From the sequence record NC_048668.1: a stretch of 64,000 nt of DNA; one strand, written 5' to 3'. The translations under genes were made by a program, and so were the position numbers. Each line of letters starts with the position of its first letter. The first letter of the stretch is position 1. Shown in pieces: positions 8,134 to 59,776 of the stretch. The notes under the pieces were generated by a model. The model was not told the origin of the DNA. It saw nothing but the letters and a program-made list of their open reading frames with translations, and searched no databases.

Positions 8134-8553
8134 ATGGCATTCAACACAACACCAAGGAAACGCGTCCTCGTACTCGGGGACGTACCTATTTATTTCAAGG
8201 CGTACGCGAAAGCATACCGTCTTGATATAAACGACATCGCTAACGCGCTATTACAAGGTGTAGCCTATGTCCTCTCCAACGAATGGGACGCAAACAGCGA
8301 CCGTGATGAGAACTTCTCTATGGCGATTCAAGACTACCTTTATTGGGAGTATGAATTAGCTCAGATAACGGAAGAGGACTTGCAGCACTTAATAGATCGT
8401 TGGGAAGAGATCATTCATAGCGTACTGGTAAACAACCGGTTAGATTGGTTAATTCGGATGGCGGAAAGTAACGGACTTGACGTCGATAGTTGTCGAGATC
8501 GTTTCAAAGCTCGCGTCGTCAAGAATCGATTAGAGATCGAATTCCTGAGGTAA
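8134..8553 (+). CDS. acidic hypothetical protein
   Basis: RBS AGGTGG; layout resembles the 40-44 kb array members. Confidence 0.7.
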   Translation: MAFNTTPRKRVLVLGDVPIYFKAYAKAYRLDINDIANALLQGVAYVLSNEWDANSDRDENFSMAIQDYLYWEYELAQITEEDLQHLIDRWEEIIHSVLVNNRLDWLIRMAESNGLDVDSCRDRFKARVVKNRLEIEFLR

Positions 8554-39579: not shown

Positions 39580-39910
39580 TATGTAGAAAACATTCTTCGT
39601 GTTTCAAAGTAGTTCAATCTTGATCTTCGGCAGTTAACGCTGCGCTTGGATTCGGATAAAACTCTGGGCGGGGTTAACCTCCCGCTCCGTTTAACAATTT
39701 GGAAAAGGTCTGAAGAAGACCAACTCCTCGCGGATTAAGTTCCGTACATTAGCCGACTAAATCGTATTCGGCTCTAAACAAGATATACCGCACTATAGAT
39801 CTGCAAACAAACGTTGAACGATTGAACGCTGTAGCGTCTTCCTTCCGTAGCTATCTCCCTCGGCGACCTTAACCGGTCGTCGGGGAGAGATATGCTATTA
39901 TGACTTTTTG
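39580..39910 (+). ncRNA. candidate non-coding RNA with repeated UUAA-loop hairpins
   Basis: TATGTA motif at 39580, no ORF, at least six hairpins, long terminator stem 39848-39897 with T-run. Confidence 0.45.
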
Positions 39911-39929: not shown

Positions 39930-39947
39930 TATATTACTACAATGATA
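39930..39947 (+). promoter_or_regulatory. early promoter TATATTAC-N5-TGATA
   Basis: ctatattactacaatgata upstream of the 11-gene array. Confidence 0.8.
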
Positions 39948-40062
39948 GGAGTTTTATACTCTAGAACTTACTGTATCAAATTGTACGTAGCTTTCACTTA
40001 TAATGAGGGTAGTTGCTGCACATTTGGTATTAAATTGAATCTGGTGGATTACAGGGACAATT

Positions 40063-40455
40063 ATGATTGGGCAAACTACAGTAGTAGGTAACGTACCATT
40101 GCTGTTACGTTCTATCACGAAACCTTATCCTTACTTAGTCCATGAGAACACGATCTTCCAATTGATGTTATTCACTTGGTGGAGTGTAGGTGACCTCGGC
40201 TGGGCAGAGCAGTTGTATACCTGGGTAATCAGGACTGGTAAGGATGAGCTTCCTCGAGCAGCCATGCTACTACCGGGAAGGAACCCGGTCGATTACGATA
40301 GGATGTTATTCGAGATATTTGATAACGTCTGTAATCACGAAGACATCCTCACTGACTACATGATCTCGAGCTTCGACCATTATCGACATCTGTACATTGA
40401 GGAAATCTATTTTAGGAAAAGGGAATTCACACTGAAACTAGCGGTGAGAAAATGA
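40063..40455 (+). CDS. array gene 1, hypothetical
   Basis: 130 aa; ATGA overlap with the next gene. Confidence 0.7.
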   Translation: MIGQTTVVGNVPLLLRSITKPYPYLVHENTIFQLMLFTWWSVGDLGWAEQLYTWVIRTGKDELPRAAMLLPGRNPVDYDRMLFEIFDNVCNHEDILTDYMISSFDHYRHLYIEEIYFRKREFTLKLAVRK

Positions 40456-40817
40456 TTATACTTTACGACATCAACACGATGATCAGTATAGCGAGAAAGA
40501 TAGACCCAGAACTGAGCCAAGGAGACTTGCTTGAAATATTCATATTTTGCATTACGAAAGACAATGATCTAAATTTGGTACATCCGACTTATATTGACGG
40601 ATCAAACAGAAGAGTAGCTGAGACAGTCAGGAGATTATGGCGGTTCATGCCAGGTTATAATTTCTTGGATATAGAGGATGTTCAACTCGCTCCATTCGGC
40701 CGTGTAGCAATACACGTAGATGAAGAGGAGTTCTACGACAGAAACCCTAATGCAATCCCTAGGAGTAAGTCATGGAGAGAATATACCGTCTCGACTACCC
40801 AATGTCTGTTCAAGTAA
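40452..40817 (+). CDS. array gene 2, hypothetical
   Basis: 121 aa; begins MIILYD. Confidence 0.7.
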   Translation: MIILYDINTMISIARKIDPELSQGDLLEIFIFCITKDNDLNLVHPTYIDGSNRRVAETVRRLWRFMPGYNFLDIEDVQLAPFGRVAIHVDEEEFYDRNPNAIPRSKSWREYTVSTTQCLFK

Positions 40818-41188
40818 TCCTGAATAAGCTGGATGGTTTGGAAGCTAAATACCGATTCCTTTATTCGTTAGTGAACACCGCTATATGGACAGGGATCTAC
40901 GAAGGGGAATCGGATAAAACCCTTTCCTTCAACGAACATTATTACAACGATCACATCGAGTACGTATACGACGACGAAGAGATGTCTGAAGAAACTCTAC
41001 AGGCTAGGATGAAGGAGTTGGATTTCTTATCTGACTTATTCACTCGACCTGAGGGAATCAATCTCTTCGAGAACAGCCTGGCTACAATGGGTCGTTCTTT
41101 GTCAGATATCGTAGACGGTTTAGCCGATCCAGTTCTGGCTGTAGAAACCGCCTTGATTAGTCACTACGATGTTTCAGTTATGGATTAG
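40772..41188 (+). CDS. array gene 3, acidic hypothetical
   Basis: RBS AGGAG; 138 aa. Confidence 0.7.
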   Translation: MERIYRLDYPMSVQVILNKLDGLEAKYRFLYSLVNTAIWTGIYEGESDKTLSFNEHYYNDHIEYVYDDEEMSEETLQARMKELDFLSDLFTRPEGINLFENSLATMGRSLSDIVDGLADPVLAVETALISHYDVSVMD

Positions 41189-41197
41189 AGGATTGCA

Positions 41198-41677
41198 ATG
41201 GGCAAGTTAGTTGTCGTAGATAGTTATTCGTTAACCGGGTTCTTGCTCAGTACAATACGACAGTTTATCCGTCGGTATCCTGAGTACCGTGAACGAATCG
41301 ATCCGAACATTTCGATAAACAATTTGCAAGAAACTACCGAGCGCATCATCTGGAATATCATTCAGAAGGACAAGCGTTTCGGTTCCCCGGAGTATTGGGA
41401 TGAGGTTCAGGAAATCGGGAAGTGGTTCAAGGGCTACGATCCCGAAGGCGTCTATATAGACGACCGTGGTGAAGAGCAAAATAGCGATGAGATGTCAGGT
41501 GAATTCTTCCGTGAAGTTATCGACATGTACGAAGTTCGTATCCGGTCAGTATTGGGATCGATCGGCGTAGATCTCAGCTGGGAATATTTGGAGTACGAGA
41601 AATCTACACCAACCGCTCTTCTATTACGGAGTCACGGTGACTATCGTATTTACGATTATCACAAACGTAATGGGTGA
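41198..41677 (+). CDS. array gene 4, acidic hypothetical
   Basis: RBS GAGGA; begins MGKLVVVD. Confidence 0.75.
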   Translation: MGKLVVVDSYSLTGFLLSTIRQFIRRYPEYRERIDPNISINNLQETTERIIWNIIQKDKRFGSPEYWDEVQEIGKWFKGYDPEGVYIDDRGEEQNSDEMSGEFFREVIDMYEVRIRSVLGSIGVDLSWEYLEYEKSTPTALLLRSHGDYRIYDYHKRNG

Positions 41678-41680
41678 GTT

Positions 41681-42028
41681 ATGAGGACATGGTTGATTCC
41701 AGTAGAAACGCTACGGGCAAGATACACGAGGTTACTCGATAATGTAGATCGGGATGCGAAGAACTCAGTTAACGTTGAGGTGCATCTGAAATACTTGTTG
41801 GCTAACCTTATGGAACCCGATCTCTTCTCCTACCGTGTTGATGAGATAGCGAACGACTTGAGTATGTTTGGTTTCGACCATATTGTCTTTGATTGTTTGG
41901 TCTTGGAGGTTAGTGATTTCTTCAAGAAACAAATCGTCTATCACACCGGCTTACCCCCGCATCTTTTCGAAGGAAACTGGCACCTTGACTTCCCAACAAG
42001 AACGTTATCGGTCAGTGCATATTGTTGA
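41681..42028 (+). CDS. array gene 5, hypothetical
   Basis: 115 aa; begins MRTWLIP. Confidence 0.7.
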   Translation: MRTWLIPVETLRARYTRLLDNVDRDAKNSVNVEVHLKYLLANLMEPDLFSYRVDEIANDLSMFGFDHIVFDCLVLEVSDFFKKQIVYHTGLPPHLFEGNWHLDFPTRTLSVSAYC

Positions 42029-42488
42029 TATCTCGAACCTACTCAGTCTATTTAAAGTCATGGTGAGTCCGTATGGGCTCTCCGTGGCTGATTGTGTTCG
42101 GGTAGCATTCCTTTATGCCATGACCTATTCAGTAAACAGTGATGGATCCTCTGTCTTTGACATGAGGTTACGTTATCGTATCGTTAATGAGATGGAGGTA
42201 CTGGTCGAGAAATCGTTGATCAAACATCCACTTAATAACGAAGAGGAGTATGAATTACATCGGACTAATATCTACCTGATGATTCAGAAAATGTCTCGTA
42301 ATCTAGGGCCGCAATCCTCAGGGTACTTCGGCGTTATTGATTCTATAGAGGATATAATGTTCGATTTTGATCTCACCTTAGGAACGCTCTATGTTAGATT
42401 TAAGAAGCCCGCCTGGGAGGCATTCAAAGAGAATAGTTCTATATCTCGACTACAAAGAGGAAATCCACGATCTCTATCTCAGCCTTAG
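42015..42488 (+). CDS. array gene 6, hypothetical (start uncertain)
   Basis: GTG at 42015 (VHIVDISNLL) overlaps the upstream stop; in frame with the 41868 ORF. Confidence 0.6.
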   Translation: MHIVDISNLLSLFKVMVSPYGLSVADCVRVAFLYAMTYSVNSDGSSVFDMRLRYRIVNEMEVLVEKSLIKHPLNNEEEYELHRTNIYLMIQKMSRNLGPQSSGYFGVIDSIEDIMFDFDLTLGTLYVRFKKPAWEAFKENSSISRLQRGNPRSLSQP

Positions 42489-42798
42489 TAAAGACTGGGG
42501 GATCATTGGAGCACCTCGATTGTTGATCGAAGGGGCTATCAACTCTATTACGGCCTCTACGCCTCCTAAGGTAATACTTAAGGAACTCTCCGAAATCATC
42601 ATGTTAGTTCGTAATCCGTTCTTCCAGAAAGAGAATTGGGACATGAACAACTGGATGTCTGACGCGCTCGTTTTTTACGGCATGTTTCAAAAGTTCTATG
42701 CGCATGTTCTACTTGCCAGGAACTTAACCGGAGAGTACTCCGTATCATCTATCGACTTCAGTCAATCTTCAATAAGGTTGATGTTGGAGAAACCATGA
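42391..42798 (+). CDS. array gene 7, hypothetical (start uncertain)
   Basis: RIVLYLDY N-terminal strand; ATGA overlap downstream. Confidence 0.6.
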   Translation: MLDLRSPPGRHSKRIVLYLDYKEEIHDLYLSLSKDWGIIGAPRLLIEGAINSITASTPPKVILKELSEIIMLVRNPFFQKENWDMNNWMSDALVFYGMFQKFYAHVLLARNLTGEYSVSSIDFSQSSIRLMLEKP

Positions 42799-43235
42799 TT
42801 AACCGTAACTTCACTTCCACGGCATTATTCGAGATTCGTGGATGGAATGCAAGTGTTCTAGATGCATTCGTAAAGAGGCACGCTCCGGATCTAACTGGCC
42901 CGGAGTTACTTAAGTATGCTGCTCAGTTGTCTTTGGATTACTACATCCATCCCAATGGAGAAGCGTTTGATAATCTCCAGGATAATCTTGAAGAACAGTT
43001 TGGTTATAACGAGTTGACGGAAGATAGCCCGGATTACGTTTATGAGCAAATTGAACGTGAAGTGCAAGTATATGTGGAAATCGTATCTGACTTCGCAAGG
43101 TATCTTGATAAAGAAATCGAACGCATCGCCAGCCGTATCGACATCCCGTTGAGCCGAGTCAGTATTGATCGTGCATTCGTACGCGGGCACACATTCGGTT
43201 TACAGTTAGTCGATTATGACCGGGAGGTTTGGTGA
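42795..43235 (+). CDS. array gene 8, acidic hypothetical
   Basis: RBS GGAG; 146 aa. Confidence 0.75.
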   Translation: MINRNFTSTALFEIRGWNASVLDAFVKRHAPDLTGPELLKYAAQLSLDYYIHPNGEAFDNLQDNLEEQFGYNELTEDSPDYVYEQIEREVQVYVEIVSDFARYLDKEIERIASRIDIPLSRVSIDRAFVRGHTFGLQLVDYDREVW

Positions 43236-43687
43236 GCACCGTAGCTAAAGTAATTGTCTTTGAAGCACTTGAGTATTTAAGGCTGTTGGAAAACCTGTGT
43301 TCTGTAGTAGAAGCCTCTGACGAAATGGTATATGTCAACCGTGAAGGTATTACCCATTGTATTCTGGATGATATCATGAGCGGCGGCACATTCGAGGGCT
43401 CTATGCGGGGCTATGTGTTTGCCGATAGTAAATGTAAAATGGATGTTGCTCTTGAAATAATCGAAGAGCAGCGTGAGTTATTAAGGAATGAATTGACTCA
43501 GGTAATGATGCGTCAGTGCATGGGTGTAATCAAAGATGCCTCTTTCATTGATAACTTCACCATACTCGGGTTAACTAAATCCATTGCGATGAGATACCTG
43601 ACAAATGATTCTGAAATGTTACCACAGCAGCGTATATCTCCCCGTCGTAATTGGGGAATACGTAGACGCGATAACCGGGCGTATTAA
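43229..43687 (+). CDS. array gene 9, hypothetical
   Basis: RBS GGAGGT; KVIVFE strand. Confidence 0.7.
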   Translation: MVSTVAKVIVFEALEYLRLLENLCSVVEASDEMVYVNREGITHCILDDIMSGGTFEGSMRGYVFADSKCKMDVALEIIEEQRELLRNELTQVMMRQCMGVIKDASFIDNFTILGLTKSIAMRYLTNDSEMLPQQRISPRRNWGIRRRDNRAY

Positions 43688-43985
43688 GAAAGAGGCTAGC
43701 GAGTCTGGGGAAGATCTGGAGATCGACCCCGTCTTCGTCATGGAAGAAGCCGTTAAAGAGATTGAATGGTGTTTCATTGAACTGTTGTCTCTCGAGGAAG
43801 GAGCGCCGCCTACTTTCGATTGGTTAATTAACTCGAGTTTACCTGCAATCAACTTCTATCGTTCTTTGATGGATACCGATGTCTTCACCCATCTACGCAA
43901 TGAGGAGTTCGACTTCGTAAGTCTGGATGTTATGAATTCTTGCGAAATCTTAGTAACTCTGAAATGGAGAAGTAAAAATGGCTGA
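43605..43985 (+). CDS. array gene 10, acidic hypothetical
   Basis: 126 aa; overlaps both neighbours. Confidence 0.65.
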   Translation: MILKCYHSSVYLPVVIGEYVDAITGRIKKEASESGEDLEIDPVFVMEEAVKEIEWCFIELLSLEEGAPPTFDWLINSSLPAINFYRSLMDTDVFTHLRNEEFDFVSLDVMNSCEILVTLKWRSKNG

Positions 43986-44403
43986 AGCAGGTAACAAGAT
44001 CCTGGGTAAGTTTAACCTGGGTGATCGGGTTACGTTCCAGATTTACCCGGTGACACTTTACGGTGACATTTTCCGTAACTGCGTCCCTACTGACCTTATC
44101 TCGTTCAAGTCAACGCCTCGATTTAATGTCGATGCTGCGGCTGAACACGCTAAGGTCTACAACTTACTTCCACCTGGCCAAGCGCCAAATGACCCTGCGG
44201 GTTATAAGTGGTTAGTAGTTACTCTGGAGAACGGCGATGAGCGCGTAATCGGTTTACCTTGGATTAAGGTTGATACAATCCAGGTAATCCAGGTAGTTAA
44301 CACCTACGTGACTATCCCGAACACTGCCCCAGAAGATCAAGAGAAGATTCGACTGGCACTCTCTGCCGCAGGTTTCAACGACGTCGAAATCAATCAGCGA
44401 TAA
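43978..44403 (+). CDS. conserved hypothetical protein (beta-rich), last gene of the operon
   Basis: GDRVTFQIYP and VIGLPWI motifs; terminator at 44411-44436. Confidence 0.75.
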   Translation: MAEAGNKILGKFNLGDRVTFQIYPVTLYGDIFRNCVPTDLISFKSTPRFNVDAAAEHAKVYNLLPPGQAPNDPAGYKWLVVTLENGDERVIGLPWIKVDTIQVIQVVNTYVTIPNTAPEDQEKIRLALSAAGFNDVEINQR

Positions 44404-44519
44404 CATACTCCTCCCTCTGCCATTAGGCAGAGGGAGGGCTATTTATTCTCTTTCTTTTTTCTTTTACGTCATGAGCTGATGGTATAGATGAAAGTTTAAG
44501 ATTAGAAAAAGGGATTAAC

Positions 44520-46748
44520 ATGTCCGCTAATATTCAGAACCCATTTAATCGTCCTGCGTCACACTACACGCGTAACATCGATGTCATTACGGGTTACATC
44601 GAACAGAATACTTTACTCCTCCATAAGTCAACTGGACTTCCGATGGATGAGTGCGAAGCTTTCGTAAGGGAAGAACTCTTCGAAGGCCCGAATAAAATGA
44701 AGGATCCTGAGTTCCTGTTATTGGAAAGGGACGACGAACTCGATCAGCATCCTAAAGCAGTGAGGTTTACTCAGTACATCAGTACAGTGACTTCAAACGG
44801 CTGGTTACTGGCACCTACCTTCACTACGGTACTGCCACCGCACATCAAACAGTCTCTGCTTTCTGAATACATCAAAGGAAACTTGAGCAAACGTTCCGCT
44901 GAGAAGCACTTGATGTTTGAAGCCGAGCGTAAAGGTAATGGATTTAAAGCTACGTTCCACAAGAACAACCAGAACAACAAAAAGATCCTGAACAACGCCA
45001 TCTCAGGCAACCACCGTTCTGAGCACAGTCCGTTACATGACCGTAGTACTCACCCGGTGTTGACTTCGTGCTGTCGTATTGCTAACGGTAGTGCTAACTC
45101 CAACGATGATCGGTTGTTGTCCGGTAACCGTCACTATTGGAAGCCTGAAGTTGTACTGAACAATATCAGTAGTATCCTCAGCCTGAGCAATTGGGACGAA
45201 GTGGAAGAAGCGGTAGTGAAGCATAACCTCCATATCCCGACAGTGGATGAAGTTATGGAAGTTATCCGTTGGGGTAGTGACCTTTATTGGGGTCGTGGTA
45301 ACCCTGACTCACCAGCTCACCGTACGATCCGTAAGTACGTAGAGGGTTGCACGGATATCGAGCGTGCAGGTATTGTTTATACCGGCGACCTTTACCACTT
45401 GCGTAAATACAACGAACCGTTAGTACGTGACTTCATCTCTGGTCTGGTTACTCCAGCTACCGAGATCGACCCTGATCATGAAGCGTGGCTGAAACACGTA
45501 GATGATGACACCATCGCACAGATGAAAGTTATGTTCCCACACATTCTCTTGGAAGAGGATCTTTGGGATGACTACGAAGAAGTGAGTCAACGTGAAGGCT
45601 TTGGTCTGATGGGCACAACGTGCAAACAGATCTACCAGAAGCTGGACAAGTATAAGGAGATCATCAACGTCTTCTTCATGTCTAAGAACATTCCGTTCCT
45701 GACTTGTGACTTCCCCCACTCCATCCGTCGTAGTGGTGTAGGTTCAGATACAGACTCCGCAATCTTTACGGTGCAGGATTGGGTACAATGGTACTCTGGT
45801 CACAACCGCGTGAACCATGAGAACATCATCATAGCCGAATCTATGGGCTTCATTGTATCTCAAACCACAACACACAACCTGGCTAGCTTGGCGGGTAACA
45901 TGGGTGTTGTAGAACCTAAAGAAGTATTCCGTCTCTCAATGAAGAACGAATACCTGTTCCCTATCTTTACTCTTACGTCTCGTGCTAAGCACTACTTTGC
46001 TAACATGGCGGTACAAGAGGGGGTAATCTTTAAGAAGTATAAACGTGAGAAGAAAGGTGTGGAGTTAATCGCATCTAACTCACCGGCCGGGGTACGTGCT
46101 GACCTTGACAGAATCATCGAGGAAATCACTGACCTGGCTACGGAAGATAAAAAGATTAACCTCGCTCGTTACTTACGCTGGGTAGCTCGTTGGGAATACA
46201 CCATTTACGATTCTATTCGTAACGGTGAAGTAACTTACCTGAAAGCTGCTCGTGTAAAAGAGGAAGATGGTTACGAAGGTGAAAACACCCCTTACCTGAA
46301 CTATGAGTTGTGGCAGGAAGTGTTCGCACCTAAGTATGGTTTGATCGAACCACCTCCGTATTCTGCTTTGGCGTTTAGCATTATTCATGACACCAAGAAG
46401 AAAACGGATAACTGGTTGAATACGTGGGAAGATCAGGAGATGGCTGGTCGCTTCCGTAAATGGTTAGCGTCTAAAGGGAAGAGTTACGTTGGTCGTATGT
46501 TGCTGCCTGAGAGTATCATTATCTCCATGGGTATTCCATCAGAGATTCTGGATGCAATCGACGTTCGCAAGATTATCGGTTCAGCAATGAGCCCGATGTA
46601 CCTGGTCTTAGAGAGCCTGGACTACTATCTGTTTGACAGTAACCAGACTCGCCTTATCTTTGACCACATCGACCGTGACGTAGCCTTTATGGACGTAGAC
46701 CAAGTGGACTCAGCACTTCGGACTCAAGTAGTTGAAGAGTTCGATTAA
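44520..46748 (+). CDS. DNA polymerase, polymerisation subunit (phiKZ gp50-like, divergent family B)
   Basis: K...NN.ISG motif (KKILNNAISG), SDTDS catalytic motif, RAKHY; 742 aa. Confidence 0.85.
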   Translation: MSANIQNPFNRPASHYTRNIDVITGYIEQNTLLLHKSTGLPMDECEAFVREELFEGPNKMKDPEFLLLERDDELDQHPKAVRFTQYISTVTSNGWLLAPTFTTVLPPHIKQSLLSEYIKGNLSKRSAEKHLMFEAERKGNGFKATFHKNNQNNKKILNNAISGNHRSEHSPLHDRSTHPVLTSCCRIANGSANSNDDRLLSGNRHYWKPEVVLNNISSILSLSNWDEVEEAVVKHNLHIPTVDEVMEVIRWGSDLYWGRGNPDSPAHRTIRKYVEGCTDIERAGIVYTGDLYHLRKYNEPLVRDFISGLVTPATEIDPDHEAWLKHVDDDTIAQMKVMFPHILLEEDLWDDYEEVSQREGFGLMGTTCKQIYQKLDKYKEIINVFFMSKNIPFLTCDFPHSIRRSGVGSDTDSAIFTVQDWVQWYSGHNRVNHENIIIAESMGFIVSQTTTHNLASLAGNMGVVEPKEVFRLSMKNEYLFPIFTLTSRAKHYFANMAVQEGVIFKKYKREKKGVELIASNSPAGVRADLDRIIEEITDLATEDKKINLARYLRWVARWEYTIYDSIRNGEVTYLKAARVKEEDGYEGENTPYLNYELWQEVFAPKYGLIEPPPYSALAFSIIHDTKKKTDNWLNTWEDQEMAGRFRKWLASKGKSYVGRMLLPESIIISMGIPSEILDAIDVRKIIGSAMSPMYLVLESLDYYLFDSNQTRLIFDHIDRDVAFMDVDQVDSALRTQVVEEFD

Positions 46749-47785
46749 CATCGACGCCGGTAATCCCATTGAAGTAGTTACCGTTCTTTAACCGATTGAA
46801 ATAGCGATCAAGGTATTGAGCAACGCGGGTATTGTTCTGCGTCTTAGTCTCTTTACCTGCCCAGGCAAGGAACGCCAGGTATCGCATATAAGCCAAGGTA
46901 TAAATACCCAGGTTCTGTCGGTTGAAGAACGTATCCGGGATTCGCAGTTTATCTGCGAGGTTATCCAGGAAGATCAGAGGGATCTGAGCTGGCAAAGTAA
47001 GGAAGTCTTTGTTGGCTGTACGTAACCGATTGATCAAGTCGGCAATAACTGAATCTGCAGGTGTGTTTAAATCCACGGAGGCCAGCCCAATTCGTTTGGG
47101 TTGGCTTACCATGGGTTTATGCTCCCATCTCGCTGCCAGACGGTTAAAGAAGCAAGTATCGATATCGCTACTGATCATGTTCACCAATGGGTATTGATAA
47201 ACGAACTGAGTAACTAGCGGTTTGACTTCGCTATATGTCTGGACATTAGCTTTCCATTTAACGAACTGGAGAGCAAGTAAACCGATGTCCAATTCTAGGA
47301 AAGCACCGGGCCTTACCGATCGGATAATCTTCACCGTTACGAGTCTGCATGGTCAAGTCGGTAAATGGATGAGATATTACCTTAATAGGTTCCAAGTCCA
47401 TCCAGATGTCTGTCACGTCCAAATTGGTTGGGTAGCGACGCTTGACGCAGATAATGAATTCGCGAACGCTTTTAGGGAAGAAAGAGTTCTTACTCAGCGC
47501 ACCTGACAGTTGAACTTCATTGTTCAGTCCAAGTGCACGGATGATCTTATCAGCCTGGGTGTTAACACGGTAATAAAAGTCTTCATCATCACCCAGGTAC
47601 TGAACCGCTACGTGCTGAAGAACCTGAACCAGGATATGGTCGGACTCCACCGCGTGTACAGATTTACGGTACCAGTATTTGGTACGAACCAAATTCGATT
47701 GAGCATTGTTCCTGAGGAGATTCATGGCGCCAGGCGTATAATCCCTGACGTTATCTGTCCTTAGGTCTTTGAATATTTCGATCAT
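46687..47785 (-). CDS. conserved virion-associated protein (phiKZ gp52-like position); +1 base at 47308-47310
   Basis: Two ORFs join into about 365 aa after removing one base (GKAGAFLELDIGLL). Confidence 0.65.
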
Positions 47786-48073: not shown

Positions 48074-49909
48074 ATGAGTCTGTCTGACCAAAACGTTAAC
48101 GAAGCTAAAAACACCCAACGCGCTGCAGCTGCACAGGGTCAACAACCTCGCGAACAAGCAGGCCGTCGTCTGAACACCAACATCTTCGAAAGCGGCCAAC
48201 TGGTACAAGCCGGCGTTTCCGGTAACGAACTGACCACTTTCATCGAGCGCTTCAACGCTTATCACGACGCAAACAAAGCTGCTCTGTCTGCCGGCGGTCA
48301 ACTGACCTGGGCCGTAATCCCAGCATCTTCTGGCGAAACCAAAATGAAGCTGGATGCAGCTGTCGTTGTCGGTAAAGCCACTACCTCCGAAGGCGTGATC
48401 ACCACTGCACTGACTCTGCTGTTCACCGGCGGCCAGCCTCTGCCGAAGCAAGTCGTAGAGATCAGCAACCGTAACGAGCGTCAGTACTCTGCCGTCGCGA
48501 ACGATCAGTTCACCGAAGCGTATCAGAAAAAGCTGACCGAAATCATCAACCGCAAAGCGCCTTACATGGGCGAAGCTGAAAACATCGTTCTGATGGGCGC
48601 CGTGGCAGTAACCAACGCGCAACTGAGCGAAGCGAAGTGTGAAGACCTGATCATCTCCGCGGTGAACTCCGTCTTCGGTTACCTGGGCAACATGCTGCGT
48701 ACCGAACACTTCTCTCTGACCGATGCGATCGACTCTCAGCGCAGCGAGTTCGTTTCTCGCGTGATCTACAATCAGGGCGATGCCCATGACGAAATCACCG
48801 AGCGTCCTCGTCGTCGCGATCTGGCCGTCGAAGTATCTCTGGCAACCAAAGGTCAGCGTAACCGTGTGTCTAACGCACTGGAAAACGCTGAAGGCGCAAT
48901 GGACATCGCAACCAATCGAAGGTTACGTTGATCTGCTGTTCCTGGGTCGTCCGGATGGTCAGCAACGTCGTTCTCGCTACCGTTCTCAGCGTGAAGAAGA
49001 CGCAGCGCGTCAGATCTACGGTAAAAACCTGGTCATCACCCACATGAAGCACGAAGCTTCTCCCGAGCACCTGTGCCTGGCACTGGCCCAGGATCCCTGT
49101 ACTGATCAACGAAAACGTTCTGACCACTGGCCTGAAGCCAGCCGGCGACAACGCGAAACTGCGTACTCCGGTTGCTCTGACCTACGAGCTGGACGAAGAG
49201 TTCGAAGCAGTGCCGGACGTTCTGGACGATGCAGAGTGGGCTGACCTGACCGACGTAGTGATCCAACCGGATCAGAACTTCGTAACCGTACTGATCGACG
49301 AAACCGGCATCACCACCCAACAGCAGAAACTGCTGCTGCAAGCGACCGACCGCATGAACCCGAACCGTGACCTGTTCGCAGACATGCTGGTACAAGCGGC
49401 TGATAACCTGACCAAAGGCGCCTTCATGGAAAGCCTGGGCGCAGCGCGTATCAACCCGCTGGATATCGGCGAACGTCAAGACCCGTATCGTCCTGCTGGG
49501 CGAATGGACTGACGACCGTGGCCAAATCCGTTCTCTGACCGAAATCGACTACTACGCGATCCTGACTGCCTTCGGCCAGAAAGATCGTCGCATCGTAGAA
49601 GACTGGGATCGTTGCCAGAACGATGTAAGCCTGCCGATCGAAATCCGTCTGGCGAAAATGGAAGAGATCATCGACCAATTCACCGGCGGTTCCTACCGCA
49701 TCACCGGTCACGGTGTTCCAGTACTGGTTAACACCCAGTGGCTGTTCACTCTGACCAACGCCGCAGAGCGCGCTGGTATGGTTACTCAGGCTGACGGTAT
49801 CTATCAGGATACTCGTTTCCGTCGTGGTTTCCAATCTCAGTACGCTACTTCCGGTTACGCCGGCAAAGCGTTCCGTATGCGTGGTACTGGTCGCAACGAT
49901 TACTTCTAA
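48074..49909 (+). CDS. chmA: chimallin, major phage-nucleus shell protein; three +1 bases (48914-15, 49091-92, 49498-500)
   Basis: RBS AAGGAG; corrected 610 aa; very strong codon bias; immediately upstream of nvRNAP beta-prime, as phiKZ gp54-gp55. Confidence 0.8.
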
Positions 49910-51758: not shown

Positions 51759-52379
51759 TTGAAAATTTCTATAGTTAGCGGAGACGAGCGATCGTTCCGA
51801 GCGGCTGCGTTCGGGATGCCTGATCGTGACTCCGTAGAGCGGACATATTCTCGTCTGGAAGAATTCAGTCGTGGGTTGTCTTCTCGGGCAAGGGAAGGTC
51901 TGGAGCGTACTCGTGGGTTGATTGAATCCATGTATGACGATACGGTGCGTAACTCGCTGCGTATTCTGGGCCGGGTTAAACGCGGGCTGTTCCGTGATGA
52001 CGTTATCCAGTTCTTGGATGATCAGACAGAAATTGCCACAGCACCGATGACCATGCGTCGTTGGATTCTGGCGCACCCATTCATCCGTAGTCGTTATGAT
52101 ACCCAGTCCATTGATGCTTGGGGTAGTAAACCCGGTCAGTGGGATCTGGAAGGTAAAGGCTATGAAGATCTCTTCTATCGTGCAGCGACCAATGGTCTGG
52201 CAACGAAGAACGAGAAAGGTGAATGGTGGAGCGAATATACGTTTGGCGGTTGTTCTGTTCCTGGTGCGGGTACTATCTCTCTGGAAGAGCAGATGGATAT
52301 CCTGGCTACCTGGGATATTATTGACGACTGCATCGCAGACGGAATCGATCCGACTTCAGTAATGAAAGAGCGTCTTTAA
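51759..52379 (+). CDS. conserved phiKZ-family hypothetical protein
   Basis: TTG directly after the exon-2 stop; MRRWILAHP and DGIDPTS motifs. Confidence 0.75.
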   Translation: MKISIVSGDERSFRAAAFGMPDRDSVERTYSRLEEFSRGLSSRAREGLERTRGLIESMYDDTVRNSLRILGRVKRGLFRDDVIQFLDDQTEIATAPMTMRRWILAHPFIRSRYDTQSIDAWGSKPGQWDLEGKGYEDLFYRAATNGLATKNEKGEWWSEYTFGGCSVPGAGTISLEEQMDILATWDIIDDCIADGIDPTSVMKERL

Positions 52380-54935: not shown

Positions 54936-55760
54936 ATGAACGCATACGACGTCCTTTCTCAGCGGGCTGTCGGCGAACTTCCGATTTCTATAGGCACGGC
55001 TCTAGCTCTTGAGGGGCTAGAGAAAAACATTAGCGCTGGTGATTCTGGTAATCAGCGCTATGGTGCTTTGTGGATTAACATTCGCACGCTGTACCGTAAC
55101 ATCTACGAATCGGTGGAGAATATCCGCCGACCTTTATTAACGCCAAAAGCAATTGCGGATACATTGATCGAAGAAGTTCAGTATATTCGTCGTTTTGCTA
55201 GCGGTAAGATTGACCACGTTCAGTTGTACCACCGTGAGTACGCAGATCTACTTCGTCGGTTCCCGAAAGCGTACATTAAGGTTCCTAATACCCCATTGCA
55301 AAAACAATACGATGCGTTCATGAACAAGACACTGGACATTGTCATTGCTCGTGATGTCGACCAAAGTATTGAATGGGATAAGGGATCAATATTGCGCGGT
55401 GAGCCTACCAAAGCGTTGATCATTACTCACTACCCGGTTGACTTACTTTCTCGTACCAAGTTCACTCAGCTACGTTTGCTGGAGTCGTACACGGCTGCGA
55501 TTAAGTCTAAGTCACAATGGAACACGAAGTTGACAGAAGGTAAGAACCTCAAGAACATGCCTTTCAACGATTTCACTATTCAGGTGTTTGGCGATGGCCC
55601 GACGCAGTTCTTGCGTATGCCAATTGCAATTCGCCGAGCGGTTATCGATTGTGCAATTAAGTACAAATGGACACCGATGACCACCACTGAAAAGATCCGT
55701 CAGAACATCCAATGGATACCTGACAAATCGATCGTAGAGCTACTCAGAGAGGCTCTCTAG
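54936..55760 (+). CDS. conserved phiKZ-family core protein (possible nuclease-like fold)
   Basis: PISIGT.LALE, INIRTLYRN, THYPVDLL, LLESYT motifs. Confidence 0.7.
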   Translation: MNAYDVLSQRAVGELPISIGTALALEGLEKNISAGDSGNQRYGALWINIRTLYRNIYESVENIRRPLLTPKAIADTLIEEVQYIRRFASGKIDHVQLYHREYADLLRRFPKAYIKVPNTPLQKQYDAFMNKTLDIVIARDVDQSIEWDKGSILRGEPTKALIITHYPVDLLSRTKFTQLRLLESYTAAIKSKSQWNTKLTEGKNLKNMPFNDFTIQVFGDGPTQFLRMPIAIRRAVIDCAIKYKWTPMTTTEKIRQNIQWIPDKSIVELLREAL

Positions 55761-56732: not shown

Positions 56733-58250
56733 ATGGAAATCTATTTTGATCCGGAAATCGACGAGAAACAAAAGCTCGTTTTGATGGGACATCCCGGAGA
56801 AGAACCGTTGGTCTGGGACATGCGTTATTACAAGAAGGTAAACGCGGAAATGTTCCGGGACATCAACGATTTCTGGCGGTGGCGTCCAGAAGAAGAACAG
56901 GCTGCGATCTTCCAGGCGTTCAGGAATATCCGCGATGTGCTCGGTGTAGTATTCGATCCAAACGTTCTGTTCAGTATCATCAACAAGGAAGTCATTAAGA
57001 TCGCGAAGTATCATCCGATCGACCTGGTTGATCACTGGGTAAGAACGCGTTCTCAGATTCGTTTTCCGGATAACCTGAAAGACGAAATGGATGATCGTGA
57101 CCGGCCTGAGCAAACGTATCTGCGTGACGACTATCGTCAGCTGACGTCTCTGTCGGTAATCCTGAAGTTCATGTTGCCGATCTGGTCTGAGTATACCATG
57201 CTCAAACTGGGGTTGCGTGAGAACCAGCAGGAAGTAGTATCCATGGCGTTGCTGCAACGTAGTGGTATTGAAGAGAGTGCTCCATTCCAGCGGTTCCGTG
57301 TATTCGTGGATTATATCGCATCGGATAACGATCCGGGTATGAGAAACATTCTCGAAGGTATCGGGACGTTGGACATGCCAGAGTGGATCTTCAGTCTGAT
57401 GATGGTAGAACGACTGGCGGCTGCAGTAGTGTCTCACAACGACGACGCGAACAAAGAGCAAACGGTTAACCTGATCTCTACGCTCTGGGCACAAACTCGA
57501 GCTAAACTGAGTCCTGACCAGAACCGTAAGAAAGGGGATGTTCGTCCTAAGACGTTTACGTCGGCGAACGGTAGCGAAGAAGACAACTCGTCTACAGCGG
57601 AAAGTTATAAACCCAAGGAACGTATCAGTGATGGTACTCGAATTGAGTTCGACTATTCTGCAGCAGATGCGGCGTTGATGGGTCGTCGGTTGATGAACGA
57701 TATCGATCTGGATCTGTTGAAACGACTGGTTCGTCGTAACTCGCTTCGTAAGTATTTCAACCCGACCGAAGAGCAAGTTAAGTTAACGGCACTGACGTTA
57801 GCGAAAATTAACCCGACTCGTGCAATGCCTCACACCGATCGTACCGGTGCGATTAACATGCTGTCGGTAGCTCAGACCTATCTGCATCAGAAAGGGTTCT
57901 CTACTCTGGCTGATCTGTTAGGTGCAAGTCGTGGTGAGCCGTGTAATACGATCTCTGGTAGCGAGCAGATCAAAGATCACCACAAAACTATACTGGCAAC
58001 CATCTATCCATATCGTCGCCAAGTAAAAGCGGGTACTGGCTCTAAGACGGTATTGAAAGATCCGGGCACAATCGCCATTGAAACATTAACAAGTAAATTC
58101 GCAGGCTATTATTGGTATCGTGATACTGATGACGTCATTGCGGAAAGCTCCAAGATGGTTATTCGGGAAGGCGGTATGGTTATCCCTAGTGATATCCGAC
58201 TGATCCTGGCTGACTTCATCATTGCATTAAACGGCCCAACTGGCCTGTAA
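56733..58250 (+). CDS. nvRNAP promoter-specificity subunit (phiKZ gp68-like)
   Basis: 505 aa; early promoter; synteny in the gp67-gp73 block. Confidence 0.7.
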   Translation: MEIYFDPEIDEKQKLVLMGHPGEEPLVWDMRYYKKVNAEMFRDINDFWRWRPEEEQAAIFQAFRNIRDVLGVVFDPNVLFSIINKEVIKIAKYHPIDLVDHWVRTRSQIRFPDNLKDEMDDRDRPEQTYLRDDYRQLTSLSVILKFMLPIWSEYTMLKLGLRENQQEVVSMALLQRSGIEESAPFQRFRVFVDYIASDNDPGMRNILEGIGTLDMPEWIFSLMMVERLAAAVVSHNDDANKEQTVNLISTLWAQTRAKLSPDQNRKKGDVRPKTFTSANGSEEDNSSTAESYKPKERISDGTRIEFDYSAADAALMGRRLMNDIDLDLLKRLVRRNSLRKYFNPTEEQVKLTALTLAKINPTRAMPHTDRTGAINMLSVAQTYLHQKGFSTLADLLGASRGEPCNTISGSEQIKDHHKTILATIYPYRRQVKAGTGSKTVLKDPGTIAIETLTSKFAGYYWYRDTDDVIAESSKMVIREGGMVIPSDIRLILADFIIALNGPTGL

Positions 58251-58282: not shown

Positions 58283-59776
58283 ATGAAACCTCAAGTTATC
58301 GACGCAATCTTCTTCGAATCTTCTAACTACGATGATCAGTTCTCTCGTTCTTTCGATACTCACTTCGACGGAGATGTATCGAATGACCTGTTGCGTAACA
58401 CCAGCAATGGTCGTAACTTGTCACCGACTGCATTGTCCCGCTCTGTGGGTTCTGCGATCACGATGCAATCTCGTCACCGTGGCGAAATCGTAATCCCAGG
58501 CGGCTGGGGCGAAAAACGTCTCAGTTTCATCATCACTGTACTGATCGACGATTATAATGGTCGTAGTCGTCGTCAGGTATTGACTGGCTATACTGACTAT
58601 AACGGCGTGTCTCGTGTAAGTGGTTCTCTGGATGATGAGATGTTGCTGTATGTCAACAACTCTACCACAATCGCAGATACCGTGTTCAGCACCGGTCGTG
58701 GTAATACTCGCCGTTCTCGTATTGAGAGCAACGATTACATCATCCGACCAAACGCACTGCGTAACGACCGTACTCGTCGTCTGGGCTTTGACGAACCTGA
58801 ACGTCTGCTTCGTCCAAACGATATCTTCAATAACCGTTCTATTGCAGAACAAACACGCTTCCTGGGCGGTAGTGACGAAATCATCGATACTCGTGGCGAT
58901 CTCGGTAACGAAATCAAACTGGGTCGTCGTACTGATAACAATGCGTCCAACTATCTGTCTCGCGTTCTTCGTGCAGGGATCATGGCTGAAACTAACACTC
59001 AGCCGGAGTTCAATGTCGAATCTCGTTTTGCGGCAGAAGAGCTGACTCCAGCGGAACATGCAGCAGCGGCAACTATGCCGAACGATATCGGTTCAAACAC
59101 ACTGTTCATGGAATTCCTGGCCAGCTGTGATTTCGGCGTAAGTGGTTCCATCACTCTGCGTGAGTTTGCAGACTGCACCGATTGGGATGAGCGTGCAACG
59201 CGCTTCATCGATGCCGGCGAAGTGGGTAAACGTGGCTATACTGGTTACGAACGTGGTCGTGGTAGCGACTGGAAAGGCTCTGACCGTAAGACCATCGCAG
59301 CATCTATCATCGCGCAATCTGTTCCGGCGTTGATGATGCAACACTTCATCTCCGATGCTATCATTAAGATCACTAATGATACATTGACTGGTGAAATGAA
59401 AGCGCTGGTAGAAGGTCCTCGTGCAATGATCCCAGGTATGGACGTAACTCCATATCTGACTCCGCTGGAAGACCTGCTGGTTCTGCAAGTCGGCGAAGTG
59501 GTATCGCACAACAACCAAATGTTGATCGATGTTCAGATCGACTGTTCTGTCATTACCGATATCAAAATCACCATCAGCATTGAAGGTGATGAGGACGAAG
59601 AGTTCGTAGCTCCGTGCTTCTGTGATGGCCTGACTTCTCCGATGAAAACTCCTGACTACGATCAGGCAGCTAAGATCGGTAACGACCTGAGCGCAATCAT
59701 CGACGACGTCGTAGACCAAATGCGTGCTGAGACCGATGAGCCAACTCGCGACTACTTCGACCGCGACGGTTATTAA
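58283..59776 (+). CDS. picA: probable nuclear import factor PicA/Imp1 (phiKZ gp69-like)
   Basis: 497 aa immediately after the gp68-like gene; assignment by synteny and size. Confidence 0.6.
   Translation: MKPQVIDAIFFESSNYDDQFSRSFDTHFDGDVSNDLLRNTSNGRNLSPTALSRSVGSAITMQSRHRGEIVIPGGWGEKRLSFIITVLIDDYNGRSRRQVLTGYTDYNGVSRVSGSLDDEMLLYVNNSTTIADTVFSTGRGNTRRSRIESNDYIIRPNALRNDRTRRLGFDEPERLLRPNDIFNNRSIAEQTRFLGGSDEIIDTRGDLGNEIKLGRRTDNNASNYLSRVLRAGIMAETNTQPEFNVESRFAAEELTPAEHAAAATMPNDIGSNTLFMEFLASCDFGVSGSITLREFADCTDWDERATRFIDAGEVGKRGYTGYERGRGSDWKGSDRKTIAASIIAQSVPALMMQHFISDAIIKITNDTLTGEMKALVEGPRAMIPGMDVTPYLTPLEDLLVLQVGEVVSHNNQMLIDVQIDCSVITDIKITISIEGDEDEEFVAPCFCDGLTSPMKTPDYDQAAKIGNDLSAIIDDVVDQMRAETDEPTRDYFDRDGY

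What the first reader, a model, noticed from the sequence alone, without database searches (positions are those of the whole stretch)
39930..44436. Early operon of 10-11 coupled, similar-sized acidic genes that look like a diverged paralog array
One TATATTAC promoter and one terminator enclose 115-160 aa genes joined by ATGA or short overlaps. Most share a layout: an N-terminal hydrophobic strand (IILYD, IYRLD, LVVVD, WLIP, HIVD, VLYLD, VIVFE), a hydrophobic helix, an acidic loop (EYVYDD vs DYVYEQ), a long helix and a C-terminal beta hairpin (RVAIHV, ALLLR, TLSVS, TLYVRF, IRLMLE, FGLQLV, EILVTL). Gene 8134..8553 looks like a dispersed member. Coupling suggests a stoichiometric hetero-oligomer; the position between PhuZ and DNA polymerase/ChmA suggests nucleus assembly, replication or import adaptors. 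No function is known to me.
Basis: inference. Interest (0 to 1): 0.7.

Follow-up and report, generated by a model that had tools for sequence, protein, structure and literature searches.

The report
Early operon of fast-evolving small paralogs
A nucleus-forming jumbo phage of Serratia makes, from one early promoter, ten small acidic proteins, at least some sharing a fold seen only in these phages, in the place where phage phiKZ keeps two cargo-specific nuclear import factors.

Summary
The window is Serratia phage 2050HW, a chimallivirus. A strong hairpin ends the PhuZ transcript. A phiKZ-type early promoter motif at 39930 and a strong terminator at 44409-44438 enclose eleven tightly packed + strand genes.

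The eleventh gene is not an array member. It is the conserved SH3DP protein (Pfam PF20287), homologue of phiKZ gp49.

The other ten are more acidic than the window's other proteins. They evolve 2-15 times faster than their flanks but stay under purifying selection. Each has one ortholog per genome, at a fixed position in relatives.

Sequence and profile methods show no significant paralogy. Structure does better:
- The g8 model matches almost only small chimallivirus proteins, several per genome, including orthologs of g6 and the g9 position.
- Nothing in PDB or AlphaFold DB clusters matches g8.

In phiKZ the syntenic array is gp43-gp48, and g4 is homologous to the start of gp43. phiKZ gp47 (Imp2) and gp48 (Imp4) are published cargo-specific nuclear import factors.

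Most likely these are cargo adaptors or co-imported accessory proteins. This function is inferred, not shown. The hetero-oligomer idea stays untested.

The parts
39847..39898 (+). Strong hairpin that closes the upstream PhuZ transcription unit
   Evidence: RNA fold -35 kcal/mol, z -7.1, 0 of 200 shuffles as stable. Moabite annotates a terminator here.
39930..39947 (+). phiKZ-type early (virion RNA polymerase) promoter motif: TATATTAC plus the conserved downstream AATGATA
   Evidence: Five copies in the window, all + strand, with a shared extended consensus. Same motif upstream of the array in four relatives. Promoter activity is inferred, not tested.
40063..40455 (+). g1, 130 aa, pI 6.1
   Evidence: ORF with orthologs in Totoro, the Logan contig and the Klebsiella FBKp24-like phages. 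No family hit. Not modelled.
40452..40817 (+). g2, 121 aa, pI 5.1; ATGA overlap with g1
   Evidence: 7-9 positional orthologs, depending on the search, in the Moabite-like, Klebsiella and PhiEaH1 lineages; PCH45 and SPLA10 are added in two of the three searches. Not modelled.
40772..41188 (+). g3, 138 aa, pI 4.3, the fastest-evolving member
   Evidence: 46% identity to Totoro, dN 0.50. Positional orthologs in Klebsiella phages found by jackhmmer. An alternative start at 40802 is used in the 2050HW record.
41198..41677 (+). g4, 159 aa, pI 4.9; homologue of the N-terminal ~155 aa of phiKZ gp43
   Evidence: AF2 pLDDT 91.5, pTM 0.85; order b-a-a-a-loop-a-b-b-a. Invariant C-terminal GD[WY]R motif. 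hhalign to the gp43 family: 87%, E 3.9e-6, motif aligned.
41681..42028 (+). g5, 115 aa, pI 5.4; unannotated in the 2050HW and Moabite records
   Evidence: Those records call a minus-strand ORF instead. Totoro and the Logan contig call g5. 9-10 orthologs, depending on the search.
42015..42488 (+). g6, 157 aa from GTG 42015 (167 aa from TTG 41985), pI 6.3
   Evidence: Its PhiEaH1 ortholog (138 aa, W8CZK8, matched by length) matches the g8 model: Foldseek prob 0.99, TM 0.52-0.54. Weak hhalign link to g8, 15.9%.
42391..42798 (+). g7, 135 aa, pI 6.8; overlaps the g6 tail by 98 nt
   Evidence: Orthologs only in Totoro and the Logan contig, with the overlap conserved there. Not modelled.
42795..43235 (+). 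g8, 146 aa, pI 4.5; reference member of the fold
   Evidence: AF2 pLDDT 88.7, pTM 0.83. Strand 6-12, helices 19-29, 35-51, 56-68, loop, helix 80-114, strands 122-130 and 133-140. BFVD hits are almost all chimallivirus small proteins. No PDB or AFDB-cluster match.
43232..43687 (+). g9, 151 aa, pI 5.3, with a basic tail; same position as phiKZ gp47/Imp2
   Evidence: Positional orthologs in Klebsiella and PCH45-like phages. The PhiEaH1 gene at this position (132 aa, W8D040) hits the g8 model weakly: prob 0.33, TM 0.37-0.40.
43605..43985 (+). g10, 126 aa, pI 4.4; overlaps the g9 tail by 83 nt; same position as phiKZ gp48/Imp4 and Goslar gp193
   Evidence: Orthologs in Totoro and the Logan contig, with the N-terminus conserved inside the overlap. 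Position relative to SH3DP. Not modelled.
43978..44403 (+). g11, 141 aa; SH3DP protein, not an array member
   Evidence: PF20287, E 6.3e-39. Found in 166 phage records. Homologue of phiKZ gp49, which PMC12571901 describes as an SH3-domain interactor of the DNA polymerase. The PCH45 ortholog gp198 is non-essential.
44409..44438 (+). Intrinsic terminator of the operon
   Evidence: 13-bp GC-rich stem followed by a T-rich tract. -27.8 kcal/mol, z -7.0.

Best explanation
This is the Serratia-phage version of a gene array that chimalliviruses keep between the gp42-like head gene or PhuZ and the SH3DP-DNA polymerase pair.

Shown here:
- One early promoter and one terminator enclose ten small, mostly acidic proteins plus SH3DP.
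- The genes are translationally coupled.
- At least g6, g8 and the g9 position share one fold. g4 has the same order of elements, but its 3-D match to g8 was not tested.
- The fold runs: N-terminal strand, three helices, a variable acidic loop, a long helix, a C-terminal hairpin. It has no match outside these phages.

Inferred history: old tandem duplication, followed by divergence so fast that sequence similarity is gone.

Inferred function, by position and weak fold resemblance to phiKZ gp47/Imp2 and gp48/Imp4: each paralog is a cargo-specific adaptor, or a co-imported accessory protein. It would present one replication, recombination or repair protein, phage or host, to the PicA/Imp1 importer (homologue at 58283-59776) at the ChmA shell. 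On this view the fast evolution reflects co-evolution with cargo and importer surfaces.
For: Transcription unit and coupling.

Synteny of the array in Totoro, a Logan contig, Klebsiella phages, PhiEaH1, SPLA10, PCH45, Eowyn, Goslar, phiKZ, PhiPA3, 201phi2-1, Phabio, Noxifer, LucasX, RSF1 and Asesino.

Orthologs are strictly positional, one per genome.

Homology at two points of the array: g4 to the N-terminus of phiKZ gp43 (87%, E 3.9e-6, GD[WY]RI motif aligned), and g11 to gp49.

Fold:
- The g8 and g4 models are confident and have the same element order.
- The g8 model hits several array genes per genome. It also hits, weakly, six proteins assigned to the Imp2 family and one assigned to the Imp4 family. 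PhiPA3 gp044 is named outright; the other assignments rest on protein length and, for 201phi2-1, adjacent accessions.
- No PDB or AFDB-cluster match.

Literature:
- phiKZ orf47 is Imp2, needed for Nlp1 import and itself imported; orf48 is Imp4, needed for TopA import (10.1101/2024.03.27.586873).
- Both are called cargo-specific adaptors.
- Both lack transposon insertions (PMC12676376).
- Goslar gp193, the gene next to SH3DP by GenBank numbering, localises in or at the phage nucleus in 100% of infected cells (PMC9891218).

The window also encodes PicA/Imp1 and Imp3 homologues.

dN is 0.16-0.50 for g1-g10 against 0.03-0.08 for the flanks, with dN/dS 0.11-0.21 where it could be computed.
Against: - No sequence or profile link between any g protein and Imp2 or Imp4 (hhalign 1.2% or less).
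- Foldseek TM-scores to proteins assigned to the Imp2 and Imp4 families are only 0.22-0.30, with high rmsd.
- Kokontis et al. report Imp2 and Imp4 as conserved only in Pseudomonas phages.
- Inter-position hhalign scores do not beat a reversed-profile null, apart from g4 to gp43.
- Six of the ten members were not modelled.
- A later preprint calls Goslar gp193 a 'RecA homolog', which does not fit a 132-aa protein, so its identity is uncertain. No RecA Pfam match exists in the Goslar record.
- No experiment exists for any gene of this phage.
Confidence: 0.4

Rival explanations
1. These are host-takeover or counter-defence proteins. Small, acidic early products would each inhibit a host defence or housekeeping factor in the cytoplasm, before the nucleus closes. 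Their fast evolution would reflect an arms race with the host.
For: - Early promoter.
- Acidic and small.
- dN 2-15 times that of the flanks.
- Most families are confined to close relatives, and there are no homologues outside chimalliviruses.
Against: - The array keeps the same locus, order and one-per-genome orthology across the fetched genomes. Counter-defence islands usually vary by presence and absence.
- The phiKZ genes at the equivalent positions (orf47, orf48) have import phenotypes and lack transposon insertions.
- dN/dS 0.11-0.21 shows purifying, not positive, selection over whole genes.
- No PADLOC match, though that library is not built for counter-defence proteins.
Confidence: 0.2
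2. This is the first reader's idea: the ten products assemble into one stoichiometric hetero-oligomer, for instance a shell-associated or replisome-associated complex. Translational coupling would set the subunit ratio.
For: - 4-nt to 98-nt overlaps and 3-9 nt gaps link all genes.
- Gene order is conserved in relatives.
- A shared fold with an exposed edge strand could pair between paralogs (inference).
Against: - Complex prediction of g7+g9+g10 with g8 scored 0.00. The tool marks this as no evidence either way.
- The number of genes between the flanking genes and SH3DP runs from about 6 to 12 between lineages in the annotation tables. That is awkward for a fixed complex.
- phiKZ Imp2 and Imp4 mutants have separate, cargo-specific phenotypes.
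Confidence: 0.15
3. These are replication accessory factors. The products act with SH3DP and the DNA polymerase encoded just downstream, for example as replisome loaders or regulators, rather than in import.
For: - They are co-transcribed with SH3DP. The phiKZ SH3DP homologue is described as an interactor of the DNA polymerase.
- The array always sits directly upstream of the polymerase.
Against: - No nucleic-acid-binding or enzymatic domain was detected.
- The acidic charge argues against DNA binding.
- This does not exclude the import model, since known Imp2 and Imp4 cargoes are a recombinase and a topoisomerase.
Confidence: 0.15
4. There is no paralogy. The genes are unrelated small proteins that merely share a common alpha/beta composition, and the Foldseek hits reflect generic helix-rich packing.
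For: - There is no significant sequence or profile similarity between positions.
- Most Foldseek hits beyond the top eight have TM below 0.5.
Against: - The one exception is a coronavirus spike fragment at rank 49 (prob 0.04).
- The same model finds nothing in PDB or AFDB clusters.
- Three consecutive PhiEaH1 array genes are hit.
- g4 and g8, which have no sequence similarity, show the same order of eight elements.
Confidence: 0.1

Closest known systems
phiKZ gp47 (Imp2) and gp48 (Imp4), cargo-specific nuclear import factors (Kokontis et al., bioRxiv 10.1101/2024.03.27.586873)
   Same: - They are the last two genes of the syntenic array, directly upstream of SH3DP (gp49) and the DNA polymerase (gp50).
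- Similar sizes: 178 and 127 aa against 151 and 126 aa for g9 and g10.
- By eye, the same N-terminal strand, acidic loop, long helix and C-terminal hairpin pattern (sequences).
- Weak Foldseek hits of the g8 model to six proteins assigned to the Imp2 family and one assigned to the Imp4 family.
   Different: - No detectable sequence or profile similarity.
- TM only 0.22-0.30.
- The authors report them as limited to Pseudomonas phages.
- The import phenotype is unknown for any gene of this phage.
phiKZ gp43 family (357 aa, function unknown)
   Same: g4 aligns over its whole length to residues 1-157 of gp43. hhalign gives 87%, E 3.9e-6, with the C-terminal GD[WY]RI-x-[DE][WY] motif aligned. It lies in the same array.
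   Different: gp43 carries about 200 extra C-terminal residues, and its function is unknown.
SH3DP, Pfam PF20287 (phiKZ gp49, PCH45 gp198)
   Same: g11 matches over the full model, E 6.3e-39, and lies next to the divergent family B polymerase PF20286.
   Different: It has a different fold and evolves slowly (87% identity to Totoro). It is the operon's last gene, not a member of the paralog set.
Goslar gp193 (132 aa, nucleus-associated; Birkholz et al. 2022, PMC9891218)
   Same: By GenBank numbering it is the gene immediately upstream of SH3DP (gp192), the position of g10. Fluorescent fusions sit in or at the phage nucleus.
   Different: There is no sequence similarity to g10. A later preprint labels gp193 a RecA homolog, so the gene's identity needs checking.
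Early host-takeover gene clusters of large lytic phages (for example the SPO1 host-takeover module)
   Same: A single early transcription unit of many small, fast-evolving genes of unknown function. This comparison is from general knowledge; the SPO1 module appeared only in an abstract.
   Different: Here the array is syntenic and orthologous across the chimallivirus genomes fetched, and part of it shares one fold.

Membership tests
SH3DP (PF20287), for g11 | Match to the Pfam model above the gathering score | tested here: met
   132.8 bits against a cut-off of 25, E 6.3e-39, model positions 1-122 of 122.
SH3DP (PF20287), for g11 | Encoded next to a divergent family B phage DNA polymerase | tested here: met
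   The gene at 44520-46748 is PF20286, E 4e-238.
phiKZ gp43 family, for g4 | Profile-profile homology with the conserved motif aligned | tested here: met
   hhalign 87.2%, E 3.9e-6, 151 columns, score 46.5 against a null maximum of 27.1. GDYRIYDY aligns with KDYRIAEY.
Imp2 (phiKZ gp47) family, for g9 and other members | Sequence or profile homology to gp47 or PhiPA3 gp44 | tested here: not met
   jackhmmer never joins them. The best hhalign probability of any g family to Imp2 is 1.2%.
Imp2 (phiKZ gp47) family, for g9 and other members | Position in the array upstream of SH3DP and the DNA polymerase | tested here: met
   gp47 is the second gene upstream of gp49, and g9 is the second gene upstream of g11.
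Imp2 (phiKZ gp47) family, for g9 and other members | Same fold | tested here: inconclusive
   The g8 model hits proteins assigned to the Imp2 family in Noxifer, 201phi2-1, SL2, PS119XW, PhiPA3 and Phabio: E 0.007-0.37, TM 0.22-0.30. Apart from PhiPA3 gp044, the assignments rest on length. g9 itself was not modelled.
Imp2 (phiKZ gp47) family, for g9 and other members | Needed for nuclear import of a specific cargo, and itself imported via Imp1 | not testable with these tools
   Needs infection genetics and microscopy.
Imp4 (phiKZ gp48) family, for g10 | Sequence or profile homology to gp48 | tested here: not met
   g10 to Imp4 did not reach the 45 best hhalign pairs (0.5% or more). The best g10 link is 11.8% to the gp46 family, within null range.
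Imp4 (phiKZ gp48) family, for g10 | Position immediately upstream of SH3DP | tested here: met
   - g6: met through its PhiEaH1 ortholog, prob 0.99, TM 0.52-0.54.
- g9 position: weak, prob 0.33.
- g4: same element order, but the superposition was not run.
- g1, g2, g3, g5, g7, g10: not modelled.
   - BLAST: best E 0.04.
- hhalign: g5-g9 19.6%, g6-g8 15.9%, all inside the reversed-profile null.
- The g8 profile finds only g8 orthologs among 1.84 billion representatives.
phiKZ-type early promoter | TATATTAC consensus upstream of an early unit | tested here: met
   Exact motif with a conserved extension; five copies, all + strand; conserved in four relatives. That this consensus marks phiKZ early promoters is from my own knowledge. 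Activity was not tested.
Known defence-related families (PADLOC) and PHROGs or Pfam families | Any model match for g1-g10 | tested here: not met
   No hit at E 0.01 or better in Pfam, PHROGs or PADLOC.

The most novel reading that the evidence does not exclude
The array is a family-wide set of cargo-specific nuclear import adaptors built on one virus-specific fold. It would have diversified by tandem duplication, so that phiKZ Imp2 and Imp4 are two diverged members rather than Pseudomonas-phage novelties. In effect it would be the phage nucleus's own adaptor family, one paralog per class of cargo, feeding the PicA/Imp1 importer.
Probability: 0.3. Interest if true: 0.8.

Novelty: new variant of a known kind. 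Interest (0 to 1): 0.62.

Why it matters
How the phage nucleus chooses which proteins to admit is an open question. So far the cargo-specific factors (Imp2, Imp4, Imp5, Imp7) are known only in phiKZ-like Pseudomonas phages, and they look like lineage-specific orphans.

Suppose the syntenic arrays of other chimalliviruses are diverged paralogs of one fold and do the same job. Then import selectivity has a general, evolvable hardware. Ten candidate adaptors become testable at once in Serratia, Klebsiella, Erwinia and E. coli phages, and cargo could be predicted from the paralog repertoire.

Even if the function differs, the work defines a fold family with no match in PDB or AlphaFold DB clusters. 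It also corrects the gene models of this locus.

Tried and rejected
- The search for related loci with PhuZ as a single protein found nothing.
- Pairwise BLAST among the products gave nothing significant.
- All-against-all jackhmmer joined g6, g8, g9 and others into one cluster. I do not rely on this. With 248 queries about one false inclusion is expected, and hhalign against reversed profiles showed those scores (24-26) lie inside the null (maximum 27.1).
- A home-made Chou-Fasman predictor reached only Q3 0.47-0.54 on the two modelled proteins, so I discarded it.
- The ESM Atlas feature search gave only sub-threshold look-alikes and holds no model.
- Complex prediction on g7+g9+g10+g8 gave 'no answer', which counts neither for nor against.
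- Public RNA runs hold only a few short contigs of the locus, with no transcript ends or timing.
- Rfam gave only a chance SmY hit, E 0.088.
The g4-to-g8 superposition and the BFVD neighbours of g4 are therefore missing.
- The Moabite note 'thymidylate kinase-like' for g4 (HHpred probability 61) found no support in Pfam or in a PDB profile search.
- The Avs5 trigger JADA corresponds to phiKZ_124, a locus outside the gp43-gp48 array.

Full report
IDENTITY AND CONTEXT

The region is 100% identical to Serratia phage vB_SmaM_2050HW (MF285618, Moabitevirus). It is 99% identical to Moabite, BUCT660 and others, and 73% identical to Totoro. The window is bases 186001-250000 of a 276,025-base virus record.

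Going downstream, the neighbourhood reads:
- a DUF7484 gene on the minus strand, homologous to the phiKZ gp42 head protein
- PhuZ
- the array
- an SH3DP gene
- a divergent family B DNA polymerase
- a gp52-like head gene on the minus strand
- ChmA and RpoBC
- further downstream, homologues of Imp3, gp66, gp68 and PicA/Imp1

THE OBSERVATION

A very stable hairpin at 39847-39898 (-35 kcal/mol, z -7.1) ends the PhuZ unit.

TATATTAC lies at 39930. The window has five copies, all on the + strand, against 1.68 expected on both strands. All five extend to TATATTAC-yTwAATGATA and sit upstream of + strand genes. The same motif precedes the first array gene in Totoro, a Logan metagenome contig, KpLz_1_41 and Eowyn. 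That this consensus marks early, virion-polymerase promoters in phiKZ-like phages is from my own knowledge. Its activity here is inferred.

A 13-bp GC-rich hairpin with a T tract at 44409-44438 (-27.8 kcal/mol, z -7.0) ends the unit. No convincing internal terminator appears.

Eleven + strand genes of 115-159 aa fill the space. Their junctions are three 4-nt overlaps, one of 8 nt, one of 14 nt, gaps of 3 and 9 nt, and three long overlaps of 46, 98 and 83 nt. The long overlaps recur in Totoro and in the Logan contig. The N-terminus of g10 inside the g9/g10 overlap is conserved. The overlaps are therefore real and not sequencing artefacts.

Gene g5 (41681-42028) is missing from the 2050HW and Moabite annotations, which call a minus-strand ORF instead. 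Totoro annotates g5, and it has 9-10 orthologs depending on the search.

The ten upstream products are more acidic than the rest of the window. Their median pI is 5.2 against 7.3 (p 0.003). g1, g6 and g7 are near neutral.

WHAT THE GENES ARE

g11 is not part of any paralog set. It is SH3DP (PF20287, E 6e-39). It is present in 166 phage records and is homologous to phiKZ gp49. [quoted passage not shown] The PCH45 ortholog gp198 is non-essential (10.64898/2025.12.19.695335).

g1-g10 match nothing in Pfam, PHROGs, PADLOC or PDB sequences.

They have orthologs in related phages, always one per genome and always in the same order. Their range is limited:
- g4: 12 sequences
- g8: 11
- g5: 9
- g6: 8
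- g2: 7
- g1: 5
- g3, g7, g9, g10: 3 each by direct search, though g3 and g9 gain positional orthologs by iteration

They evolve fast. Identity to Totoro is 46-77%, against 87-95% for the flanking genes. dN is 0.16-0.50 against 0.03-0.08. Where dS was not saturated, dN/dS is 0.11-0.21, so they are real genes under purifying selection.

IS IT A PARALOG ARRAY?

By sequence, no.
- BLAST between members gives nothing better than E 0.04.
- Seeded jackhmmer never crosses positions.
- A g8 profile run against 1.84 billion representative proteins finds 16 proteins. All 13 newly found ones that a local scan could classify are g8 orthologs.
- All-against-all jackhmmer did merge g6, g8, g9 and some Klebsiella-phage and Pseudomonas-phage families.
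- However, hhalign gives only 13-20% for those pairs, and their scores of 24-26 fall inside a reversed-profile null whose maximum is 27.1.
- Only one inter-family link is solid. g4 aligns to the N-terminal 157 residues of the phiKZ gp43 family (87%, E 3.9e-6, score 46.5), with the invariant GD[WY]RI motif aligned.

By structure, yes for part of the array.
- AlphaFold2 on a 15-sequence alignment gives g8 pLDDT 88.7 and pTM 0.83. The order is strand 6-12, helices 19-29, 35-51 and 56-68, an acidic loop, a 35-residue helix 80-114, then a hairpin 122-130/133-140.
- Foldseek of this model against BFVD returns 330 matches at E 10 or better. 49 of the top 50 are small proteins of 94-287 aa, and every organism-named one among them is from a chimallivirus-type jumbo phage. 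The one exception is a coronavirus spike fragment at rank 49 (prob 0.04).
- In PhiEaH1 it hits three consecutive array genes, assigned by protein length: the g8 ortholog (E 2.5e-7, TM 0.77-0.79), the g6 ortholog (prob 0.99, TM 0.52-0.54) and the gene at the g9 position (prob 0.33).
- Several other genomes contribute two to four hits each, often with adjacent accession numbers.
- The same model finds nothing in PDB (best prob 0.15) or in AlphaFold DB clusters (best TM 0.32).
- g4, which has no sequence similarity to g8, models at pLDDT 91.5 and pTM 0.85 with the same order of elements. It adds a small hairpin in the acidic loop and an extra C-terminal helix.

g1, g2, g3, g5, g7, g10 and gene 8134-8553 therefore remain untested. 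Gene 8134-8553 has an ortholog only in Totoro among five relatives.

THE LINK TO FUNCTION

The same arrangement is present in all seventeen chimallivirus genomes and contigs fetched with enough flank, enterobacterial as well as Pseudomonas, Ralstonia and Xanthomonas phages. In each, a gp42-like gene on the opposite strand (with or without PhuZ) is followed by some 6-12 small co-directional genes, then SH3DP, then the polymerase.

In phiKZ the array is gp43-gp48. g4 is homologous to the start of gp43 and g11 to gp49, so the arrays are homologous at two points and not merely similar in form.

Kokontis et al. showed the following (10.1101/2024.03.27.586873):
- phiKZ orf47 (Imp2) is specifically required for import of Nlp1 and is itself imported through Imp1.
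- orf48 (Imp4) is specifically required for import of host TopA.

A 2026 preprint calls both cargo-specific adaptors. Neither tolerates transposon insertions (PMC12676376). Nlp1 is a recombinase.

By position, g9 and g10 correspond to Imp2 and Imp4, and their sizes agree (151 and 126 aa against 178 and 127 aa). Read by eye, the Imp4, Imp2 and gp46 sequences show the same N-terminal hydrophobic strand, acidic loop, long helix and C-terminal hairpin (sequences printed; this is inference).

The g8 model also picks up six proteins assigned to the Imp2 family and one assigned to the Imp4 family, at TM 0.22-0.30 only. PhiPA3 gp044 is named outright. The others are assigned by length and, for 201phi2-1, by adjacent accessions.

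In Goslar, gp193 is by GenBank numbering the gene next to SH3DP; the paper follows that numbering for ChmA (gp189) and PhuZ (gp201). It localises in or at the phage nucleus in all infected cells (PMC9891218). A later preprint calls gp193 a RecA homolog. That does not fit a 132-aa protein, and no RecA Pfam match exists in the Goslar record. I treat this point as supportive but unconfirmed.

MECHANISM PROPOSED

Shown:
- one early-type promoter, one terminator and tight coupling
- ten fast-evolving acidic small proteins plus SH3DP
- one virus-specific fold shared by at least g8, the g6 ortholog and (weakly) the g9-position ortholog, with g4 sharing the element order
- synteny with the phiKZ array that contains Imp2 and Imp4, and homology to it at two points

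Inferred:
- The array arose by old tandem duplication.
- Each paralog binds one cargo, probably a replication, recombination or repair protein, and presents it to PicA/Imp1 at the ChmA shell.
- The variable acidic loop and the high dN reflect co-evolution with cargo and importer surfaces.
- Coupling and early timing provide the adaptors as the nucleus forms.

I put this at about 0.4.

Rivals:
- cytoplasmic host-takeover or counter-defence proteins (0.2)
- a single hetero-oligomer (0.15)
- replisome accessory factors working with SH3DP and the polymerase (0.15, and not exclusive of the first)
- no true paralogy (0.1)

The complex prediction for g7+g9+g10 with g8 gave no answer and counts neither way.

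NOVELTY

I found no paper that describes these arrays as one fold family or that links Imp2 and Imp4 to syntenic genes outside Pseudomonas phages. Kokontis et al. state that Imp2 and Imp4 are conserved only in Pseudomonas phages.

The genes themselves are deposited as hypothetical proteins. I rate the finding a new variant of a known kind, namely chimallivirus early accessory or import factors. A more novel reading, a family-wide adaptor family, is not excluded.

LIMITS

- Only two of ten members were modelled.
- There is no 3-D comparison of the two models.
- There is no expression or functional data for this phage.

Noticed in passing
window 48164-49885 and 46702-47785: The ChmA nuclear-shell gene is not one ORF here. 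A relative's ChmA matches four pieces in frames 2, 3, 1 and 2. The gp52-like head gene on the minus strand is split in two. The 2050HW record annotates fragments, while Moabite annotates the head gene as a single 1,098-nt CDS. These are probably frameshift errors in this assembly rather than biology.
   Followed up: partly
window 41681-42028: g5 (115 aa) is missed in the 2050HW and Moabite records, which annotate a minus-strand ORF at 41765-41944 instead. Totoro calls g5, and orthologs exist in nine or more phages.
   Followed up: yes
window 7311, 25376, 39930, 56687, 61874: Five early-promoter-like sites share TATATTAC-yTwAATGATA, all on the + strand and upstream of genes. Together they give an extended promoter consensus for this phage.
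   Followed up: partly
window 41198-41677 (g4): The family has an invariant C-terminal GD[WY]R motif (G147, D148, R150), shared with the first domain of phiKZ gp43. This suggests a conserved binding or catalytic site of unknown role. The Moabite note 'thymidylate kinase-like' is not supported.
   Followed up: partly
window 51759-52379, 54936-55760, 56733-58250, 58283-59776: These are homologues of phiKZ Imp3 (gp59), gp66, nvRNAP subunit gp68 and the importer PicA/Imp1 (gp69; 27% identity, E 4e-43). The core import machinery is therefore encoded about 14 kb downstream of the array.
   Followed up: partly
Among five relatives it has an ortholog only in Totoro (69% identity). Its sequence reads as the same strand-helices-hairpin layout, but no structural test was possible.
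   Followed up: partly
L011 6567-6965 (Goslar_00193): Goslar 'gp193' is used in the literature as a nuclear marker and later called a RecA homolog. By GenBank numbering it is a 132-aa array gene, and the Goslar record has no RecA Pfam match.
   Followed up: partly
window 42391-42488 and 43605-43687: Two long gene overlaps (98 and 83 nt) place the N-terminal part of g7 and g10 over the C-terminal tail of g6 and g9. The same overlap arrangement recurs in Totoro and the Logan contig. Residue conservation in both frames was examined only for the g9/g10 overlap.
   Followed up: partly
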